Source of the DNA: Octopus sinensis
Lineage: Eukaryota
Direction: 5' to 3'
Length of the DNA: 64,000 bases
NCBI RefSeq assembly: GCF_006345805.1
Contig: NC_042999.1
Location: forward strand, 141,422,001 to 141,486,000
Of this stretch, positions 46,924-62,804 are shown piece after piece. Position 1 is the first letter of the stretch, and every line of letters starts with the position of its first letter. The translations under genes were made by a program, and so were the position numbers. The notes beneath the pieces were generated by a model. It saw nothing but the letters and a program-made list of their open reading frames with translations. It was not told the origin of the DNA and made no database searches.

Positions 46924-49619
46924 CAGTTTCTGTCTACCATATCCACTTACAAGACTTTGGTTGGCCTGGAGCTATTGAAGACACTTGTCCAAGATCCTTC
47001 TCAGCCACATATCTACACACACACACATGTATATGAATAAATAAAATTATGGTTAGCATTTTTATATTCACATTTATCATGCTAGTATTGGTTGGATGAG
47101 ACCTATTGAGTAGTGTTCTAATCTTAACTTCTGCATAAAGCCTTTGACATCTCTTATGCCATATATCAAACAAGTTACCATAAGGATCTTCACTGCCTTC
47201 AGCCAGACGATGAAAGGTGGCTAAAATTTACAGGCCACTGTTTTTGTTGAACAGGTCAACCTATCATTGCTTTTTTTTTTTCTATAACCCTGTGGTCAGG
47301 CCCACGTGACATATATCCATGAATTTATGTAGGACACAGGACTGTACACAGTCTCAGTACACACACAATGTCATCTTGCACAACCTGGAGGGAAATTTGC
47401 TTTTGTTGGAGTCATCATTCACAAGTGATATGGCATAGACTAAACAAAATATTCTAAAATACTTTTTATTCTGTTGGTTTATGCATGTTGAATCTACCAA
47501 GCTGCAGGTCATTTTGTTTACAGGACTCATGAACATCATTACTGTTCAAGTAATGTGAATATGATAGTATGCAGAGACAAACATATGCATTATTTCTGTC
47601 TTTCCCATCATACTGGTATACGTTAAATGTGACTTCTTGTGGTAGTCTTAATTTGACTTGCCAATGTTCAGTGATGGACAAGAACAAAAATGGTTTTCAG
47701 CATGTGTGTGGCTGGCTTTCATACAATTTTCTTCTATCAAATTTCACTCAAGTTAAGTCTATCTAAACCCCAAACCACTTGATAAAGTTTGATCTTAACC
47801 ACTCAATCATGCCTGGATGTGTATGAACACATGTAGAAATGATTAATTGTCACAAGATAGATAAGAACTACAAACGCTAAATGATATTCTTGTATTTACT
47901 TTCAATTTTGTCTATGAAATAACTGTTAGACAGCCAGAGGGACTACAAATGCCTTCTGTTTGTAGGAATGACTATCTCACTATCTTGAAATTGGAAGGCC
48001 ATGATACTTATGAAACTAAGACATTCTGATTTTGTTAAGTTTGACATGATTGTATTTACTTATTTTATTAAAGTTTTTTTCTTGAAGTTGACAATAAGCT
48101 TTCGTATCTTGGAATTTAAGTATTTACTTTGACATATTTATAAATTACTGTTTGCAATGAAATAGAGCTATGAATGCTTAGTGGCTGGGAGAAAAAATTC
48201 CCATAAGGCTTTCTGAATTTGCTTCCTTGACTACTGAACTATACTGGATAACCATGATCAGTCTTATTTTTGACACATGCTTATTCTGTTCCTCTCACAT
48301 ATACATGATATATGCCTTTTCTTACATAACCTTCCTCCTCTTGGTAACTAAACCATGCAGTTGTGCTATAGTTATATTCTCAGGTGCTATGCATATTCTA
48401 TGTCCCTTTTCTCTTGTTGTATCCTTTCTATTTCTCTCTACTTATCCCTGTCCTCTTGACTTCATCTCATGTCTTGCTAACTTACAGTTATTCTTGGTCA
48501 GCATATATACCCCTTATTACATTTTCTCTTTTCTCCATATATCCCTTCACTCGCTGATATTCTTTATCATACATTCCCTCTGTTATCTCCTTACATATCT
48601 TTCTCTTATAGGACTCCTGTGTATCCCTTTCTCAGCTTTAATATACAGTTTTGCCTAACAATGTTAAGTATTGTAGGCTGTAATTGAAAGTCTTTACTGG
48701 GAAGACATGGATTTCTCAAGCTGCAATAAAGGTAACCCATCCAGGAAAGCAGTACCTCAAAACTGACTTGTTGATAAAACACAACCATTCTATGTTTTGA
48801 AGTGGTTTTAATGAGGGTAACTAGCTAACAAAATAATGCTAAAATCATGAAAATATCTAATTCAATTAAAATCCTGATTGCATATACAAGACTAACTCTA
48901 TACTAGTGTTGTGAATGTTTAGTGAGGTTAGGTGGCAACCTGGCCAAGAATGCCTTGACCATCATCAAAATTGTATATATTCTTTCAGGTGTAGAAAACA
49001 AACTTCAAATGCTTTTCTTATTGGGTAAAAGAGAAAAAAACCCCTCAGTACTGCAACTGTCATTGTGGATACATTGAAAGGTAGATATAGAGATACTAGA
49101 ACAGAGGTAGGTAGATGTGTGCTACATGCGAAAGGTGAGATGGAGGGGAGCAGAACTCATCGAGCAAAGAATATCCACTTTTCCATTCTTGCATGGGTGA
49201 GACAGAATTTCAAGCAGAGTTTCTACAGTAACATGCCTTTCCTAATTACTAGACATGTTTTTCATAGAAGACTAGAAATGAATAAACACTGCTTGTGTGA
49301 TGTTCTTGAGACAAGAGTACAAACAAACACACATATGCATGCTCACCAGTAAAAGATATTTGCCCAAAGTGCCATGCAGTGAGACTGAACTAATATGGTT
49401 AGGAAGCAAGCTTCTTGATCACACAACCATATCTTTACTTTGTACAAATTCTTCTAAGTAGACAACAATACTTAGTTAAGTAGCATAGGTATACTGATGA
49501 CTGAAAAATTAAAAGCAATGGAAGAAATGGGGTAATGTAAAATATTTAAAATAAGTGTTGGTAAAGCATCAGCAAGAACAGTTGTCACTGATTATGTATG
49601 ACAGTTTTTATGAGAACTT

Positions 49620-51242: not shown

Positions 51243-51348
51243 TTAAATTTCACTCATCAGTTTATTGGCTGCACTGCAAGTTAATTCTATTCCACTAGGT
51301 TCTACAAGTAGCTGCTTGACAATACCATTCTCAACAACCATGGCATAC
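51243..51348 (-). CDS. PRDX5: PRDX5 exon 6 (last coding, resolving Cys)
   Basis: TTTTTGCAG acceptor; (R)YAMVVENGIVKQLLVEPSGIELTCSAANKLMSEI*. Confidence 0.97.
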
Positions 51349-53119: not shown

Positions 53120-53175
53120 CGTTTTGATCGAACATTTCCTAGCACTGCTGAGAGGTCGATCTCAAGACCAAGAGC
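53120..53175 (-). CDS. PRDX5: PRDX5 exon 5
   Basis: TTTTAG acceptor; ALGLEIDLSAVLGNVRSK+CG; donor GTAAGT, phase 2. Confidence 0.96.
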
Positions 53176-54104: not shown

Positions 54105-54143
54105 CTTTGTAAATTCTGCTTGTATGTCTGCCAACATTCGTAT
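54105..54143 (-). CDS. PRDX5: PRDX5 exon 4 (39 nt)
   Basis: Long pyrimidine tract + TTTCAG; IRMLADIQAEFTK (cf. human VRLLADPTGAFGK); donor AAG|GTAAAT. Confidence 0.95.
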
Positions 54144-54410
54144 CTGAAATAAAAGAAAAAAAAATTTGTTGAATAATTTGTACTCAAAGAAACTTAGGGT
54201 TAGGGTTCCTTGAATGGTACATGAAAAGCCCCAATGGCCTTGACAAGGCAGAAATACATTTTTCTCTTTCTTTTGCATACCTCTCTGAAGGATTGTGGAT
54301 AGCTATCAAACAAAATGTGCCATACTTTAGGTCTTTCAGCAAAATGTTCTATATCTAATATTTCCTTGTTCAGAAGAACGTTTATGAACAATAGTGCTTT
54401 TTTATTGCTC

Positions 54411-55215
54411 AGCACAAGACCAACACCTGGATGTGGCTAAGAAAAAGTGAGCTGAAAGGATGCACTAAGGCGCCAATATGCAGTACTCAGGAACAAGCTC
54501 TGAGAACACATTACACCAAGTTCCAAATAGATAAAAGTGGTAAATCTCCCTTTTGTATGATGTTGTATGACATCAAAAATGAAATTGTTTCACATATTGT
54601 TAGTTAGCATAGCAAATTAGCTCAAAAGGGGTCATGATAACAAAGCTAGGTATGTTCATTGGAGATTGAGAAATATGACCTTGAAAGGACATTGAAATGG
54701 TATGATCGTTAACCAGCTGCCACTGAGAATAATGAGTATTAGATCTTGTGGAATTTTACAATCCAGTATGTTTCAGTGACTGATGTTTGGAGATTAGACA
54801 TTATTGTAGTAGATAAAATGATGAAGGAAATGAAGATCATAGATACTGCTGTACCAAGGGTGATAATGAACTGGAAAAGATGAAGTACAAGCCACTAAAA
54901 GATGAAATTGCACGAATGTGGGCTAAGGAAGAAAGTAACTGTCATCCCACTAGTTATAGGACACTAGGTGCATTAACAATCAGGTTTGAGAAATTTGTTA
55001 GAGAAAATGAGATTGACAGTAGAACATTCTCAGAAAACTGCTTTATTAGGAGTAGCAAAGATTTTGAGATTGGTACTTAGATGTTAAATATCATGGAAAG
55101 AGACTCTGTGAGACTCTTGACAACAAGTTGTCTGCTCTTATAAAATTAACCAAAGCAAGTGAAATTGACAGTTCTGAGAAATGAAATGGAAATAGAATAA
55201 TAATAATAATGATAA
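54411..55215 (+). mobile_element. R4/Dong-like RLE non-LTR retrotransposon 3' end with (TAA)n tail
   Basis: WMWLRKSELKG, QEQALRT, KILWNFTIQ, LDIIVVDK, IIDTAVP, MKYKPLKDEIARMW, LGALT; degenerate CCHC and PD..D-type nuclease region. Confidence 0.8.
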
Positions 55216-55224
55216 TCACTCACT

Positions 55225-55712
55225 CTCTGCAAACATATAGTTTAGTTGCTGCTATAAATAAATAGGATGCTTATTTACATTCGAGGATGACTCAGAGAAA
55301 AAATCATAAGCTAAGATCTTAGCATTATAACACAGTTTTATGTATATGTATATGAAATGTTTTTACCCTGTGTCTTCAATTTAGATCTGAATTTAATTTT
55401 CCTGACCTTGAATTTAAGTAATTTCTTGACAGAAACTTTTTCCCCCATGAGGTACAATCTCAATTTCACACTCTCTATTCATCTCTCTCTCTCTCTCCCT
55501 CCCCCTCTCTGCAAACATAGTTTTGCTGGCGCTATAAATAAATACGGTGTTTATTTACATTCCAGGATGTCTCAGAGAAAAAATTGTAAACTAAGATCTT
55601 AACATTGTAATACACAGATGTATGTATATCTGAATATATATTTGAAATATTTTTGCCATGTGCCTTAAATTTAGATTTGAATTTAATTTTCCTATCCTCA
55701 AATTTAATTAAT
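55225..55712 (+). repeat. Diverged tandem duplication of a ~200-bp unit (55225-55422 and 55504-55712)
   Basis: Both units read CTCTCTGCAAACAT...GCTATAAATAAATA...TTATTTACATTC...CTCAGAGAAAAAA...AATTTAGAT.TGAATTTAATTTTCCT. Confidence 0.8.
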
Positions 55713-56084
55713 TGGCCAGATGGCCAATCTAACCCACTTTGCTCCTAACATAACAGACCAAACCTGAAACCCATCCAATAGGCCCTACCCCTACCCACAA
55801 AATATCTCCCCCAAATAGATATGAACACATGTCAAGGAGGATGAACATTAGCACTCCATTTTGGAAGGTCATAGAAAGTGTTTGAAATCAATAATGACAA
55901 AGGTTATCCTACCAATTCAGTCAACTACAAGAACAAAAGCAGCGAAAATGATCAGAGACAGAAGTGTAATGATAGCAAAAAATTCACTGCAACTAAAGGA
56001 ACTAGTCAAAGAGAACAATAGCTTACAACAGTGCTACCACCGCCAATAACAATACAAGCAAATGATAATAATACTAATAATAAC

Positions 56085-56930
56085 ATGCCCTGGGTATGGC
56101 ATGAAACTGCATCTGGTTATGGCATCAGGACATGGGACGAACAAAGTTATCCTTAACCACAACTACCTTCAGGTCACTGTTGGGCAAAGTATAGTGCCTG
56201 TAAGCCCACCTTGAGACCTAGAAATACTAGGTTGGTGTCTGGCAGGGTGAAGCCTATCTCGTGGGAGGAGGGATCCCTTTAGCCTTGGTCAGAAATCCCT
56301 CTAGAGAAGGTGACTCAATAAAAACACCGATGGTTGTACCACCTCAACACCAAAATTCTCAGGAGTTAAAATGTCAAATACAAAGATATTAAACAATGAA
56401 TTGAACAAAACTGACACTAAAATCAATGTACATGAGGGTAGGAGTGGACTCTTGGAGCCTTGGCTAGCAACCCACCTAATCATGATAAAAGTACTGGCGA
56501 TTGCACAACCTTACAAATACTACCTCTAAATGAGTGATGTCAAAATTAAATAATAACCACAACTGCACTAATAGGATTGGAACTGATAACAGTGAAGGTG
56601 TTGCAGGCAGGGAGTATCTGATCAGGCTCTGGCAGGTCGTCATCAATCAGGACCAAAATCACAGTCAAAAGTGCAAAAGAAAAAGAATGAAATGGGAAAA
56701 AGATGAAAACAAAATATTAGAAGAATGCTGGCTGAGTAGTGAGCCAAATAAAAGAGGCTTCATGAATCGAATGAAGAGAATATGAGATGCAAAAAGAGGT
56801 TTGAAGCATCTGCCCAGTGACCGATAGACCAAGCAAGAGCAATCTGTAGGAATGACTGGATTATGGGAGTAGAGATTGAAGAAATTCAGAGAAACATGAT
56901 AAAAGAAAAGAACAGAAGGAGAGTGAAACA
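56085..56930 (+). mobile_element. R4/Dong-like element 5' portion
   Basis: KRKRMKWEKDENKILEECWLSSEPNKRGFMNRMKRI...EIEEI, a typical R4-clade N-terminus; begins right after a TAA-rich run. Confidence 0.7.
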
Positions 56931-57190: not shown

Positions 57191-57344
57191 ATATTAGCAC
57201 AAAATCAAACTTGTGTGGGACTGATATTGGTGATTAAATCAATCCTTTATACTATTCATTTAGTTTATTCAACCTAGACGGATATGAAGATAAATCTGAC
57301 ATTGGCAGTACTAACCATTGTTACATTGGTATAAGGCTCAAAAA

Positions 57345-57442
57345 CTTTCATAACAAATGGATCGTTGACTGCCACACAGTTAATAGATGTGATCCCTTTC
57401 TTTTTGAGTTCATTATGTTTTTCAATATAACCAGGCAAATGA
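57345..57442 (-). repeat. 98-nt duplicate of the PRDX5 exon 3 core (source 57808-57905) inside intron 3
   Basis: 97/98 identical by eye (one C/T difference at a CpG), same orientation, 463 nt offset. Confidence 0.95.
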
Positions 57443-57775
57443 ATAATCTATAACATAATGATTGAAGAAGTGGGACTGCATCCAATTTATTTTTGCCTCA
57501 TGTTATTAAAAAAGTCCTAACTTTGAAATTATAAATGAATATTAAAAAAATCTGTAAACCATAACATTTATTCGTATATCAGAAATAAATTATAATGCTT
57601 AATATCAAGTTCCTGAAACTTACCACAAAATTGGAAACCCCAGTCCAATGTAGCTTCCCAAAATATGGTGTGATATCATGACCTATATCTGGAAATGATT
57701 ATACTATTTTAAAGAAAAAAATATGTGACTATTGAATTACTCCAGATGCCATTCCAAATTAAATCAAAAGCTCAC

Positions 57776-57907
57776 CTTTCCTGTTGCATTATGGGTTTCA
57801 CCCCAAGCTTTCATAACAAATGGATCGTTGACTGCCACACAGTTAATAGATGCGATCCCTTTCTTTTTGAGTTCATTATGTTTTTCAATATAACCAGGCA
57901 AATGAGA
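57776..57907 (-). CDS. PRDX5: PRDX5 exon 3
   Basis: TTTTGCAG acceptor; 132 nt, SHLPGYIEKHNELKKKGIASINCVAVNDPFVMKAWGETHNATGK; donor AAG|GTGAGC. Confidence 0.97.

Positions 57908-58925: not shown

Positions 58926-58964
<39 letters not shown>
58926..58964. repeat. (TAA)n microsatellite
   Basis: About 13 perfect units visible. Confidence 0.95.
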
Positions 58965-58965
<1 letters not shown>

Positions 58966-60683: not shown

Positions 60684-60818
60684 TTCTGAACAAGTAGGAG
60701 TAAATGCACCTGGTACACCAAAAATAACATGCTTTCCACTACCAAACAGTTCACTAGAATTCAGTTTGGTGTTAGGGTTGTGTTCAAAGAGACTGGCACT
60801 GGGGATAGCATCACCAAC
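60684..60818 (-). CDS. PRDX5: PRDX5 exon 2 (peroxidatic Cys)
   Basis: TTATAG acceptor; 135 nt, VGDAIPSASLFEHNPNTKLNSSELFGSGKHVIFGVPGAFTPTCSE; donor GAA|GTAAGT. Confidence 0.97.
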
Positions 60819-61022
60819 CTATAATGTAAGAGAAAACAGTACAAATATACATGCGCACACATGAATATGTGAATATATATACCATCAGTAACTTTTTTTT
60901 CAGTTTTAATAATTTCATTATAAATATAAATCATTGTACTTTAATATTAGCATATATGGTGTTCTTATGGAGATGTAAAGTTACAAGTCATATTCATTGT
61001 TGTTGTTATTATTATTATTATT

Positions 61023-61430
61023 ATGGATCTTTTTGGTTTGAACGGCAGTTTTTTCTAGTGGTGTCATATGAAATTGTCACCCATAATTATGACCCTAGTA
61101 TCGATCTATTGCATTTCAATCTATTTTAGGGTTAGGGGAAAGGGTATCTTTTTTCTTCACAAATGTAAATAAACCCAATCTGTTTCTTAAATGAGGGACA
61201 TATTCATGTGGCACAGAATGTTGTTTACCTCAATGGACGTCAGTGATTGGTTGAAATTGCAGAAATTGAAGAAAAAAACAACAAATATCTTACAAACTAT
61301 AGAATTTTCTCAATAAAGCAGAGAGAAAAAGATGTTTTATAAACACATTCTACCAGTATAGGAAGTTGAAAAGTTTTTTAGTTACCTAGAAATTATGTTA
61401 AAAACTGCCGTTCAAACCAAAACGATCCAT
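61023..61430. mobile_element. MITE / non-autonomous DNA transposon with ~30-bp TIRs
   Basis: Left ATGGATCTTTTTGGTTTGAACGGCAGTTTT and right AAAACTGCCGTTCAAACCAAAACGATCCAT (1 mismatch); flanked by (TAT)n on both sides. Confidence 0.85.
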
Positions 61431-62804
61431 TATTATTATTCATAAGCAGGCAATTATCAATCCAAATGACAATTTTCTCACAAACTACTAGCTGTATAAT
61501 GATATTTATGAGAGTGCTAAGTTTTGTAGAGTGATCAATGATAAATTTCAGAGAGATTTCTAAATTTCTCACCCTGGTAGAGATTTAGAAATCACAAAAT
61601 GAAGGTATTTTGGGGCTTAGTTGATTTTCATAAATTTAATTAAGAGAACAGCAGCAATACATATTTAAAGTTCTTCTAGGCTGTAGAAGTGGATAAAGTT
61701 AGTTTAATGTTCATTATTTGAATTATTTGCAAGGCTAAAGTTGTAAGGAAAGGGAACTGCAGGAGAATCCATTGTTTAGAAAGTACTGCGAAATATTTCA
61801 GTGAGACAATATGAATTAAGAGAAATGAATAGAGAGAAGGAATGGTTGGCAAATATTCAGAGTGATACTGACAAAAGGCTTGCCTCTCAGATAAATAGCT
61901 ATTTCTTGAATGTATTCCAGAATGTGTGTAGAGGTCAGATATAGTTTTCTAGTGTTAAGCAAATCTGCCTATTGTATAAACTTAGTAACTGCTCAAGACT
62001 GATATATTTTTCTGGCTGTGAAGAGTAAGTCCATCCTTTGTGAAGTAGACTCGGTTTTTAGGAAGAATATGTGGTAAAGTGGGTTACTCTGAAGATTGTG
62101 AAAATATTGTAAGCTCTAGCGTCTGTAGGAACAAGTTACTTTTAGCTCTATAACAGATAATTCATTGTTGTGAATTTGTTCATATTTTTTAAACTTTTTT
62201 GTTGTTGTGAAGGGTTTTGATGAATGAAATAAGTTCCTATAGCAGTATCTGACAAATCTAGCTAAAACCTATGTTTAATAAGTAGTTATTAGATAAATAT
62301 ATAGTATTAAACTAAATATTTAGAAAGCAATATGTAAACACCATGAGTACACATTTGTCAAATACAGAAGAAAGACAGGTCTAAAGAGGTTTCATAAATT
62401 TGCTATGCAGTAGACAAATTATTCATTTTTCTTACATAAATTAGTTACACCCTTCTGAAATTAGGCCATTCTTGCTACCTTTATAGTTTGATTATTGATA
62501 ACTAAAATACAAAATAACAATACATCACATACATCCCAATAATTTAGTGGCAAAAGAGACTGATAGAATAAATACCAGGCTTAATAAAGGAAAAAATAAC
62601 TACTGGGGCGGATGCGCTCGACTAGAGTGTTTCTAAATAGTACTCCAGTATGACCGCAGTCTAAATGACTAAAATAAGTAAAAGATAAAAGATCTGTATG
62701 ATGTTTTTGCAATTGGATAAATATCAACAGAATTTTTAAACACGATTCACAGTGAAATCCTTGGCTCTTGCTATAATTTTGGTGCCACCTTAGCATCTGT
62801 TCAA

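What the first reader, a model, noticed from the sequence alone, without database searches (positions are those of the whole stretch)
57316..57447. Duplicated PRDX5 exon 3 core sits between an AG and a GT exactly 132 nt apart: a possible newborn alternative exon
Seen: 98 nt of exon 3 are copied 463 nt downstream (transcript sense), 97/98 identical. On the minus strand the copy is preceded by CTTCTTCAATCATTATGTTATAG| and followed by ATG|GTTAGT. This defines a stop-free, phase 0/0, 132-nt exon, the same length as true exon 3: IIHLPGYIEKHNELKKKGITSINCVAVNDPFVMKVFEPYTNVTM. It lacks the conserved AWG Trp. A second in-frame donor (AAT|GTAACA) would give 123 nt. Inference: this could be a mutually exclusive or tandem exon caught at birth, or an older duplicate homogenised by gene conversion (flank AATGTAACA vs AATGCAACA in the real exon). 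The length match could also be chance.
Basis: partly seen in the sequence, partly recalled or inferred. Interest (0 to 1): 0.75.

Follow-up and report, generated by a model that had tools for sequence, protein, structure and literature searches.

The report
Partial PRDX5 exon copy in intron
In the common-octopus lineage, 98 bases of exon 3 of the peroxiredoxin-5 gene were pasted into the next intron together with 164 bases of unknown origin; the result looks like a spliceable exon by chance, nothing shows it is used, and it is most likely an inert DNA-repair scar.

Summary
The window is Octopus sinensis, and PRDX5 lies on the minus strand. Exon 3 nt 3-100 (57905-57808) recur at 57442-57345, 97/98 identical. 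An AG/GT-bounded, stop-free, phase 0/0 frame of 132 nt (57447-57316) exists.

It is not an assembly artefact. The independent long-read O. vulgaris assembly carries the same copy, 98/98 identical to its exon 3.

O. bimaculoides has a clean empty site. A 258-nt block (57606-57349: a 164-nt AT-rich filler plus the exon copy) is missing. The junction shows a 4-nt AAAG microhomology, a 1-nt deletion, no target-site duplication and no poly(A). The last 29-33 nt of the putative exon and its GTTAGT donor are ancestral intron, 33/33 identical in O. bimaculoides. This refutes "old duplicate homogenised by gene conversion" and makes the AATGTAACA/AATGCAACA resemblance chance.

The AG comes from the filler. 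In random placements, 28% gave a stop-free AG..GT frame and 1.9% gave exactly 132 nt.

The candidate exon replaces near-invariant A-W-G...K with V-F-E...M. All annotated O. sinensis and O. vulgaris isoforms use only canonical exon 3. Expression could not be tested directly.

Verdict: a lineage-specific templated insertion, about 2.5-34 My old, that forms an unproven pseudo-exon. Low interest.

The parts
57776..57907 (-). Canonical PRDX5 exon 3 (132 nt, phase 0/0; SHLPGY...AWGETHNATGK), the source of the copy
   Evidence: identical to the exon used in P0121/P0122
57345..57442 (-). 98-nt copy of exon 3 nt 3-100; 97/98 identical in O. sinensis and 98/98 in O. vulgaris
57443..57606 (-). 164-nt AT-rich filler (GC 22.6%) of unknown origin. 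It was co-inserted with the copy and supplies the candidate polypyrimidine tract and acceptor AG
   Evidence: no match in the window or in any of the five loci fetched
57349..57606 (-). Whole 258-nt block present in O. sinensis and O. vulgaris but absent from O. bimaculoides, which has 1 nt there
57345..57348 (-). AAAG microhomology shared by the exon-3 template (ATGAAAG) and the empty target site (CTTAAAAG|TTTTT)
   Evidence: direct reading of both sequences
57316..57344 (-). 3' end of the putative exon. This is ancestral intron 3 sequence, not exon-derived
   Evidence: window 57348-57316 is 33/33 identical to L001 16953-16985
57448..57449 (-). Candidate acceptor AG, which lies in the filler
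   Evidence: 11 of 17 pyrimidines upstream; 82 of 569 AGs in the gene region do as well
57314..57315 (-). Candidate donor GT (ATG|GTTAGT), pre-existing in the ancestral intron
   Evidence: 2.3 bits against 3.6-7.2 for the four real donors
57316..57447 (-).
60684..60818 (-). PRDX5 exon 2 (carries the peroxidatic Cys, ...PGAFTPTCSE); ends in phase 0
54105..54143 (-). PRDX5 exon 4 (IRMLADIQAEFTK), phase 0/0
53120..53175 (-). PRDX5 exon 5 (ALGLEIDLSAVLGNVRSK-)
51246..51348 (-). PRDX5 last coding exon (YAMVVENG...LTCSAANKLMSEI); 51246 is the last codon, and the stop codon TAA follows immediately after it

Best explanation
This is a lineage-specific, two-piece templated insertion in intron 3 of the Octopus sinensis peroxiredoxin-5 gene. 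A break or stalled fork in the intron was patched in an ancestor of O. vulgaris and O. sinensis, after that lineage split from O. bimaculoides. The patch has two pieces: (i) 164 nt of AT-rich DNA from an unidentified donor, and (ii) 94-98 nt templated from the gene's own exon 3, 463 nt upstream. It was sealed at a 4-nt AAAG microhomology with loss of one base, and shows no target-site duplication or poly(A). The copy is in frame by descent. An AG in the filler and a pre-existing intronic GT happen to bracket it at 132 nt, which produces an exon-like open frame. It is most likely a neutral pseudo-exon that is skipped or used only as splicing noise. If it were used, it would yield a PRDX5 lacking the near-invariant A-W-G...K motif. 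Shown: the presence/absence pattern, the junction anatomy, the ancestral origin of the 3' end and donor, the loss of conserved residues, and the weak donor. Inferred: the repair mechanism and the lack of splicing.
For: The window equals O. sinensis CM016861.1 (100% over 1001 nt), and O. vulgaris carries the same structure at 99.7%. O. bimaculoides aligns collinearly on both sides with a 258-nt versus 1-nt gap exactly at 57606-57349. The empty site reads ...caggaactt|aaaag|tttttgagccttataccaatgtaacaatggttagt. O. bimaculoides, Argonauta hians and a third octopus transcript (SRR16213285) each have one exon 3. The copy carries the states derived in the sinensis/vulgaris lineage at exon nt 63 and 81. 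The filler matches nothing in the window or in the loci, and no close PRDX5 paralogue appears among the protein hits. The AG..GT frame is expected in 28% of random placements and the 132-nt length in 1.9%. The donor scores below all four real donors, and 27 of 584 GTs in the gene score at least as well. The replaced positions are conserved as A 117, W 122, G 121 and K 122 of 123 homologues. All five members of the Octopus PRDX5 protein cluster, including O. sinensis X1/X2 and the two O. vulgaris models, use canonical exon 3. The O. vulgaris annotation used Iso-Seq plus RNA-seq with PASA isoform updates (PMC10700109). A search with the conceptual alternative isoform found no protein containing the alternative exon. 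These introns carry many other lineage-specific indels.
Against: No read-level expression data could be examined. The absence of an annotated isoform does not exclude low or tissue-specific use. The copy carries whatever splicing enhancers exon 3 has. Its acceptor tract is no poorer in pyrimidines than those of real exons 3 and 6. Inclusion stays in frame, alone or in tandem, so nonsense-mediated decay would not hide it. The copy begins only 2 nt inside the exon's 5' boundary, which a random DNA breakpoint does not explain well and which hints at an RNA or cDNA template. The donor of the filler is unknown, so the mechanism is inferred from junction anatomy alone.
Confidence: 0.75

Rival explanations
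1. It is a genuine newborn alternative exon, spliced either as a cassette after exon 3 (a 44-aa in-frame insertion) or in place of exon 3 (mutually exclusive), and it gives a PRDX5 isoform with an altered alpha-3 region.
For: The frame is open, phase 0/0 and 132 nt, with AG and GT at the boundaries. The acceptor tract is comparable to those of real exons 3 and 6. The exon body is inherited from a constitutive exon. It has been retained in two species for at least ~2.5 My.
Against: Neither splice site was inherited: the AG is in the filler and the GT is in the ancestral intron. The donor is weaker than every real donor. Such frames arise in 28% of random placements. A, W, G and K, conserved in 117-122 of 123 homologues, are replaced, and a proline is introduced. 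No annotated isoform uses it in O. sinensis or in the Iso-Seq-supported O. vulgaris set. Nothing would enforce mutual exclusivity, because the intervening intron is 328 nt and both exons are phase 0/0. The only substitution since the species split is non-synonymous.
Confidence: 0.12
2. It is an old tandem duplication of the whole of exon 3, whose core is kept identical by gene conversion while the ends diverged.
Against: The 3' end and donor are 33/33 identical to the uninterrupted intron of O. bimaculoides, which has a clean empty site. Argonauta has a single exon 3. The 164 nt upstream of the copy show no similarity to intron 2. Loss by recombination between the repeats would remove 463 nt including the 3' end of exon 3, and that is not what O. 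bimaculoides shows.
Confidence: 0.02
3. It is an assembly artefact: a falsely duplicated segment.
For: None beyond the general possibility.
Against: The same structure is in two independent assemblies of two species, with one base difference inside the copy. The O. vulgaris assembly is based on ONT long reads (PMC10700109). The two copies have different flanks.
Confidence: 0.01
4. A mobile element that had captured part of exon 3 (transduplication) inserted here, or the filler is a mitochondrial fragment (NUMT) captured in the same repair event.
For: The filler is foreign to the locus and much more AT-rich than the rest of the intron (22.6% vs 37% GC). One frame is open over all 54 codons under the invertebrate mitochondrial code, whereas the standard code gives two TGA stops.
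Against: There are no terminal inverted repeats, target-site duplication or poly(A), and no tRNA or Rfam match. There are no further copies in the 64-kb window or in the loci. By my estimate, one open frame among six in DNA this AT-rich has a chance of roughly 0.08. The peptide has no Pfam or PDB hit at E<=10.
Confidence: 0.08

Closest known systems
Tandem exon duplication giving mutually exclusive or substitution exons (reviews: PMC9013439; PMC9741552)
   Same: A copy of an exon lies in the adjacent intron on the same strand. It is in frame, has the same length and phase, and is bounded by AG and GT.
   Different: Only 98 of 132 nt are homologous. The splice sites were not duplicated: one comes from foreign filler and the other from the old intron. 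There is no transcript evidence, and the conserved AWG...K motif is lost. Known events are mostly ancient and highly expressed (abstract of PMC9741552, seen). This one is restricted to the vulgaris/sinensis clade.
Class 2 templated sequence insertions: double-strand-break repair patches with end-joining signatures (PMC5110952)
   Same: It is a short insert of a few hundred nt templated from elsewhere. It has no target-site duplication and no poly(A). It shows microhomology and a micro-deletion at the junction.
   Different: One piece is templated from only 463 nt away in the same gene, which looks more like a replication template switch of the FoSTeS/MMBIR type (named from my own knowledge). 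The donor of the other piece is unidentified. Whether the template was RNA or DNA is unknown.
Exonisation of intronic sequence, or pseudo-exons with fortuitous splice sites
   Same: The splice-site-like signals are accidental, and the candidate exon is young and lineage-specific.
   Different: The body of the candidate derives from the gene's own coding exon, so it is in frame and may carry that exon's splicing enhancers.

Membership tests
Mutually exclusive exon pair from tandem exon duplication | The candidate exon is homologous to the neighbouring exon over essentially its whole length | tested here: not met
   Homology covers exon nt 3-100 only. The last 29-33 nt are ancestral intron.
Mutually exclusive exon pair from tandem exon duplication | Same length (or the same modulo 3) and compatible phases with flanking AG/GT | tested here: met
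   132 nt, phase 0/0. Expected by chance in 1.9% (exact length) or 28% (any in-frame AG..GT) of random placements.
Mutually exclusive exon pair from tandem exon duplication | Transcripts contain one and only one of the two exons | not testable with these tools
   No read data are available. Indirectly negative: all annotated isoforms of O. sinensis, O. vulgaris and O. bimaculoides and one related transcript use canonical exon 3. No protein containing the alternative exon was found. One search also found none, but it failed to return even the canonical Octopus protein, so it is uninformative.
Mutually exclusive exon pair from tandem exon duplication | A mechanism that enforces exclusivity (too-short intron, frame shift with NMD on double inclusion, or competing RNA structures) | tested here: not met
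   The intervening intron is 328 nt, and both exons are phase 0/0, so double inclusion stays in frame. The RNA fold of the insert is unremarkable, z = +0.52.
Mutually exclusive exon pair from tandem exon duplication | The duplicate is conserved across species under purifying selection | tested here: not met
   Present only in O. sinensis and O. vulgaris; absent in O. bimaculoides and Argonauta. The single substitution is non-synonymous. There are too few changes for a selection test.
Class 2 templated sequence insertion (break-repair patch) | No target-site duplication and no poly(A) tail or signal | tested here: met
   Comparison of the filled and empty sites.
Class 2 templated sequence insertion (break-repair patch) | End-joining signatures at the junctions (microhomology, micro-deletion) | tested here: met
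   4-nt AAAG microhomology and loss of one A at the target.
Class 2 templated sequence insertion (break-repair patch) | An identifiable donor sequence elsewhere in the genome | tested here: inconclusive
   The donor of the 98-nt piece is exon 3. The donor of the 164-nt filler was not found in the window or loci. The whole genome cannot be searched here.
Class 2 templated sequence insertion (break-repair patch) | RNA-derived template | tested here: inconclusive
   The copy starts 2 nt inside the 5' boundary of exon 3, which is suggestive. However, it is not joined to exon 2, and it stops in mid-exon.
Peroxiredoxin-5 (Prx5 subfamily), the host gene | Redoxin/AhpC-TSA fold with the peroxidatic Cys in PGAFTPxCS, the VNDxFVMxAWG motif and a C-terminal resolving Cys | tested here: met
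   Hits carry PF08534/PF00578. The best hits are named peroxiredoxin-5 of Octopus, and the motifs are present in the canonical exons. The candidate exon itself lacks AWG.
Transposon-mediated exon capture | Terminal repeats, a target-site duplication and multiple genomic copies | tested here: not met
   No terminal inverted repeats or target-site duplication. No other copy in the window or loci. Genome-wide copy number is not testable here.
NUMT (nuclear copy of mitochondrial DNA) as the source of the filler | Sequence identity to the species' mitochondrial genome | not testable with these tools
   Only indirect evidence: one frame is open under mitochondrial code 5, and there is no Pfam or PDB hit.

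The most novel reading that the evidence does not exclude
The insert is a proto-exon observed soon after its origin. A partial copy of a constitutive exon, imported together with a foreign acceptor, recruits an old intronic GT and is spliced at a low or tissue-specific level in O. vulgaris and O. sinensis. This would document a route to alternative exons in which only the exon body is duplicated and both splice sites are co-opted, with the ancestral empty site still available in O. bimaculoides.
Probability: 0.1. Interest if true: 0.55.

Novelty: new member of a known kind. Interest (0 to 1): 0.2.

Why it matters
As it stands, it matters little. It is one of many lineage-specific indels in the introns of this gene, and it most likely has no effect on the protein. 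It has three modest uses. First, it is a clean, datable example of a two-piece templated insertion, with the filled and empty sites both preserved in sequenced octopus genomes. Second, it warns annotators that an in-frame, same-length exon look-alike can arise from a partial exon copy plus chance splice sites. Third, it marks a possible instability: the two 98-nt direct repeats could recombine and delete the conserved 3' end of exon 3. If junction reads showed that it is spliced, it would become a useful natural experiment on how alternative exons are born.

Tried and rejected
- **Old duplication plus gene conversion:** rejected on the O. bimaculoides empty site.
- **Assembly artefact:** rejected because two independent assemblies carry the copy.
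- **Origin of the filler, local search:** BLAST with word size 7 against the window and all five loci found nothing. Rfam at E<=1 and tRNA scans found nothing. There are no terminal repeats.
- **NUMT idea:** the open frame under the mitochondrial code gave no Pfam or PDB hit. The search of protein representatives turned the peptide away because it is not an exact window sequence, and it rejected the exact window translation because of two stops.
- **Protein evidence for the alternative exon:** the full conceptual isoform recovered only canonical proteins. A short 71-aa junction query returned only 24 unrelated short peroxiredoxins and not even the Octopus protein, so that negative is uninformative.
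- **Exact-sequence look-ups of conceptual isoforms:** not attempted. The canonical O. sinensis and O. vulgaris proteins are recorded only from genome records, so the positive control would fail.
- **Structure prediction of the conceptual isoform:** not attempted. A spliced conceptual protein is not an exact window sequence, and the conservation table already answers the question.
- **RNA structure of the insert:** no signal.
- **Literature:** searches for a known PRDX5 duplicated or alternative exon 3 found nothing relevant.

Full report
**Locus and gene model.** A probe with human PRDX5 and frame translations map a peroxiredoxin-5 gene on the minus strand.
- Exon 2: 60818-60684 (VGDAIP...PGAFTPTCSE).
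- Exon 3: 57907-57776 (132 nt, SHLPGY...VNDPFVMKAWGETHNATGK).
- Exon 4: 54143-54105.
- Exon 5: 53175-53120.
- Last coding exon: 51348-51246.

The junctions around exon 3 are all phase 0. A protein search names the gene. The best hit is peroxiredoxin-5, mitochondrial, of Octopus. The cluster holds the X1 and X2 isoforms of O. bimaculoides and O. sinensis and two O. vulgaris models. The window is 100% identical over 1001 nt to O. sinensis CM016861.1 (L002) and 99.7% identical to O. vulgaris OX597816.1 (L003). The first coding exons lie beyond the window end (and the L002 mapping).

Exon 3 nt 3-100 (57905-57808) recur at 57442-57345, 463 nt downstream in transcript sense. Identity is 97/98 in O. 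sinensis (G>A at 57390, Ala>Thr) and 98/98 in O. vulgaris. No third copy exists in the 64 kb. The candidate exon 57447-57316 is preceded by ...gttatag and followed by gttagt. It is stop-free, phase 0/0 and 132 nt. The 123-nt alternative donor also exists.

**It is real DNA.** Two independent assemblies of two species carry it, and they differ by one base inside the copy. The O. vulgaris assembly was built from ONT long reads plus Illumina (PMC10700109).

**What it is.** The orthologous O. bimaculoides locus (L001) aligns collinearly on both sides but lacks 258 nt, window 57606-57349, and has a single base in their place. Read directly:
- Empty site: ...caggaactt-aaaag-tttttgagccttataccaatgtaacaatggttagtactgcc.
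- Filled site: ...caggaactt-[gatattaagc...ccatttgttatg]-aaag-tttttgagcc...

The insert therefore has two pieces. The first is 164 nt of filler (57606-57443, GC 22.6% against 37% for the rest of the intron). It matches nothing in the window or in any fetched locus. The second is the exon-3 copy. The copy's last four bases, AAAG, are shared with the target, which is a microhomology. One A of the target is lost. There is no target-site duplication and no poly(A).

The last 33 nt of the candidate exon, window 57348-57316, are 33/33 identical to the uninterrupted O. bimaculoides intron. The GTTAGT donor that follows them reads the same at the empty site. The 3' end of the "exon" is therefore old intron and not a diverged exon copy. 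The AATGTAACA/AATGCAACA resemblance is coincidence.

**Polarity and age.**
- Argonauta hians and O. bimaculoides each have one exon 3. A transcript from a third octopus (SRR16213285) shows only the canonical exon.
- At exon nt 63 and 81, O. sinensis and O. vulgaris carry states that differ from O. bimaculoides, SRR16213285 and Argonauta. The copy has those derived states. The copy was therefore made in the sinensis/vulgaris lineage after the split.
- Deletion by recombination between the repeats would remove 463 nt, including the 3' end of exon 3. That is not what O. bimaculoides shows.
- With the dates quoted in PMC10700109, the event falls between about 34 and 2.5 Mya. No differences are shared by the two species' copies, which favours the younger part of that range but only weakly.
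- These introns contain many other lineage-specific indels, so such events are routine here.

**Is it an exon?** None of its exon-like features needs selection to explain it.
- *Frame.* The open frame over the core is inherited. The AG lies in the filler and the GT in the old intron. When the core was placed at random positions in this gene's introns, 28% of trials gave a stop-free in-frame AG..GT frame and 1.9% gave exactly 132 nt.
- *Splice sites.* These were scored with a rough consensus matrix whose frequencies I recalled from the literature, so it is only a yardstick. The donor ATG|GTTAGT scores 2.3 bits against 3.6-7.2 for the four real donors, and 27 of 584 GTs in the region score at least as well. 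The acceptor has 11 of 17 pyrimidines, equal to the poorest real acceptors, and 82 of 569 AGs match that.
- *Exclusivity.* The intron between exon 3 and the candidate is 328 nt, and both exons are symmetric. Nothing would make them mutually exclusive.
- *Protein.* The candidate keeps the exon-3 residues up to VNDPFVMK. It then replaces A-W-G-E-T-H-N-A-T-G-K with V-F-E-P-Y-T-N-V-T-M. In 123 homologues those positions are A in 117, W in 122, G in 121 and K in 122. By homology with human PRDX5 (my own numbering from the mature sequence: peroxidatic Cys47, Trp84), this is helix alpha-3, and the candidate puts a proline inside it. That last point is inference.
- *Transcripts.* All five members of the Octopus PRDX5 protein cluster use canonical exon 3. 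The O. vulgaris gene set was built with Iso-Seq from several stages, bulk RNA-seq and PASA isoform updates. A search with the conceptual alternative isoform returned no protein carrying the alternative exon. A second, short query was uninformative, because it did not even recover the Octopus protein.

**Mechanism.** The junction anatomy fits a break-repair or template-switch patch. It is two templated pieces, one of them taken from 463 nt away, with microhomology, a one-base deletion and no transposon hallmarks. This matches the class 2 templated sequence insertions described in human genomes (PMC5110952). It also matches microhomology-mediated template switching, which I name from my own knowledge.

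Two loose ends remain.
- The copy starts only 2 nt inside the 5' boundary of exon 3. This could point to an RNA or cDNA template. However, the sequence upstream is not exon 2, and the copy stops in mid-exon.
- The filler is open in one frame under the invertebrate mitochondrial code. That is weak evidence by my own estimate, about 0.08 by chance. It has no Pfam or PDB support.

**Comparison with what is known, and verdict.** It resembles the starting material of tandem-exon-duplication events (PMC9013439, PMC9741552). It fails the features that define them: full-length homology, inherited splice sites, an exclusivity mechanism, conservation and transcripts. It is best filed as a young templated insertion that happens to form a pseudo-exon. 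No literature on a duplicated PRDX5 exon was found. Interest is low unless junction reads show that it is used.

Noticed in passing
window 61017-61429 (arms 61014-61053 and 61400-61439): A ~413-nt block bounded by 40-nt inverted repeats (90% complementary) lies in the intron upstream of exon 2. It is present in O. sinensis and O. vulgaris and absent from O. bimaculoides, so it looks like a MITE-type insertion.
   Followed up: partly
window 55216-55713, inside 54151-56927: Two ~210-nt units, about 80% identical and spaced 280-290 nt, sit within a ~2.8-kb stretch of intron 3 that has no counterpart in O. bimaculoides. This is another lineage-specific insertion or duplication.
   Followed up: partly
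window 57443-57606, minus strand, frame 1: The 164-nt filler is open over all 54 codons under the invertebrate mitochondrial code, whereas the standard code gives two TGA stops. Its GC is 22.6%. It may be a mitochondrial fragment, but the evidence is weak and there is no Pfam or PDB hit.
   Followed up: partly
window 57345-57442 and 57808-57905: The two 98-nt direct repeats could mediate a 463-nt deletion. That would fuse the start of exon 3 to the VFEPYTNVTM|gttagt end and remove the conserved AWG motif from the only exon 3. This is a potential instability and was not tested.
   Followed up: no
window 57390 (also 57751 and 57119): Only three differences separate O. sinensis from O. vulgaris over 1001 nt (0.3%). 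One is the G>A inside the copy, which turns Ala into Thr in the conceptual exon.
   Followed up: yes
beyond window end (>64000); L002 3001-6977: The first coding exons of both annotated isoforms (MACSRISAV... and MDVIK) are not in the window. The gene runs about 4 kb past its high end.
   Followed up: partly
window 58934-58965 and 60993-61024: (ATT)n/(AAT)n microsatellites lie in the introns flanking exon 2.
   Followed up: no
L003 21774-22257 (roughly window 48200-48700, plus strand): In the O. vulgaris record, a gene whose product carries AMPK beta-subunit domains (PF16561, PF04739) ends convergently just downstream of PRDX5. I found no coding ORF in that stretch of the window, so it is probably 3' UTR there.
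   Followed up: partly
(tool behaviour): A 71-aa query to the search for homologous proteins returned only 24 candidates of 103-125 aa and missed the 189-aa Octopus PRDX5, which shares most of its words. Negatives from short queries with that tool should not be trusted.
   Followed up: no
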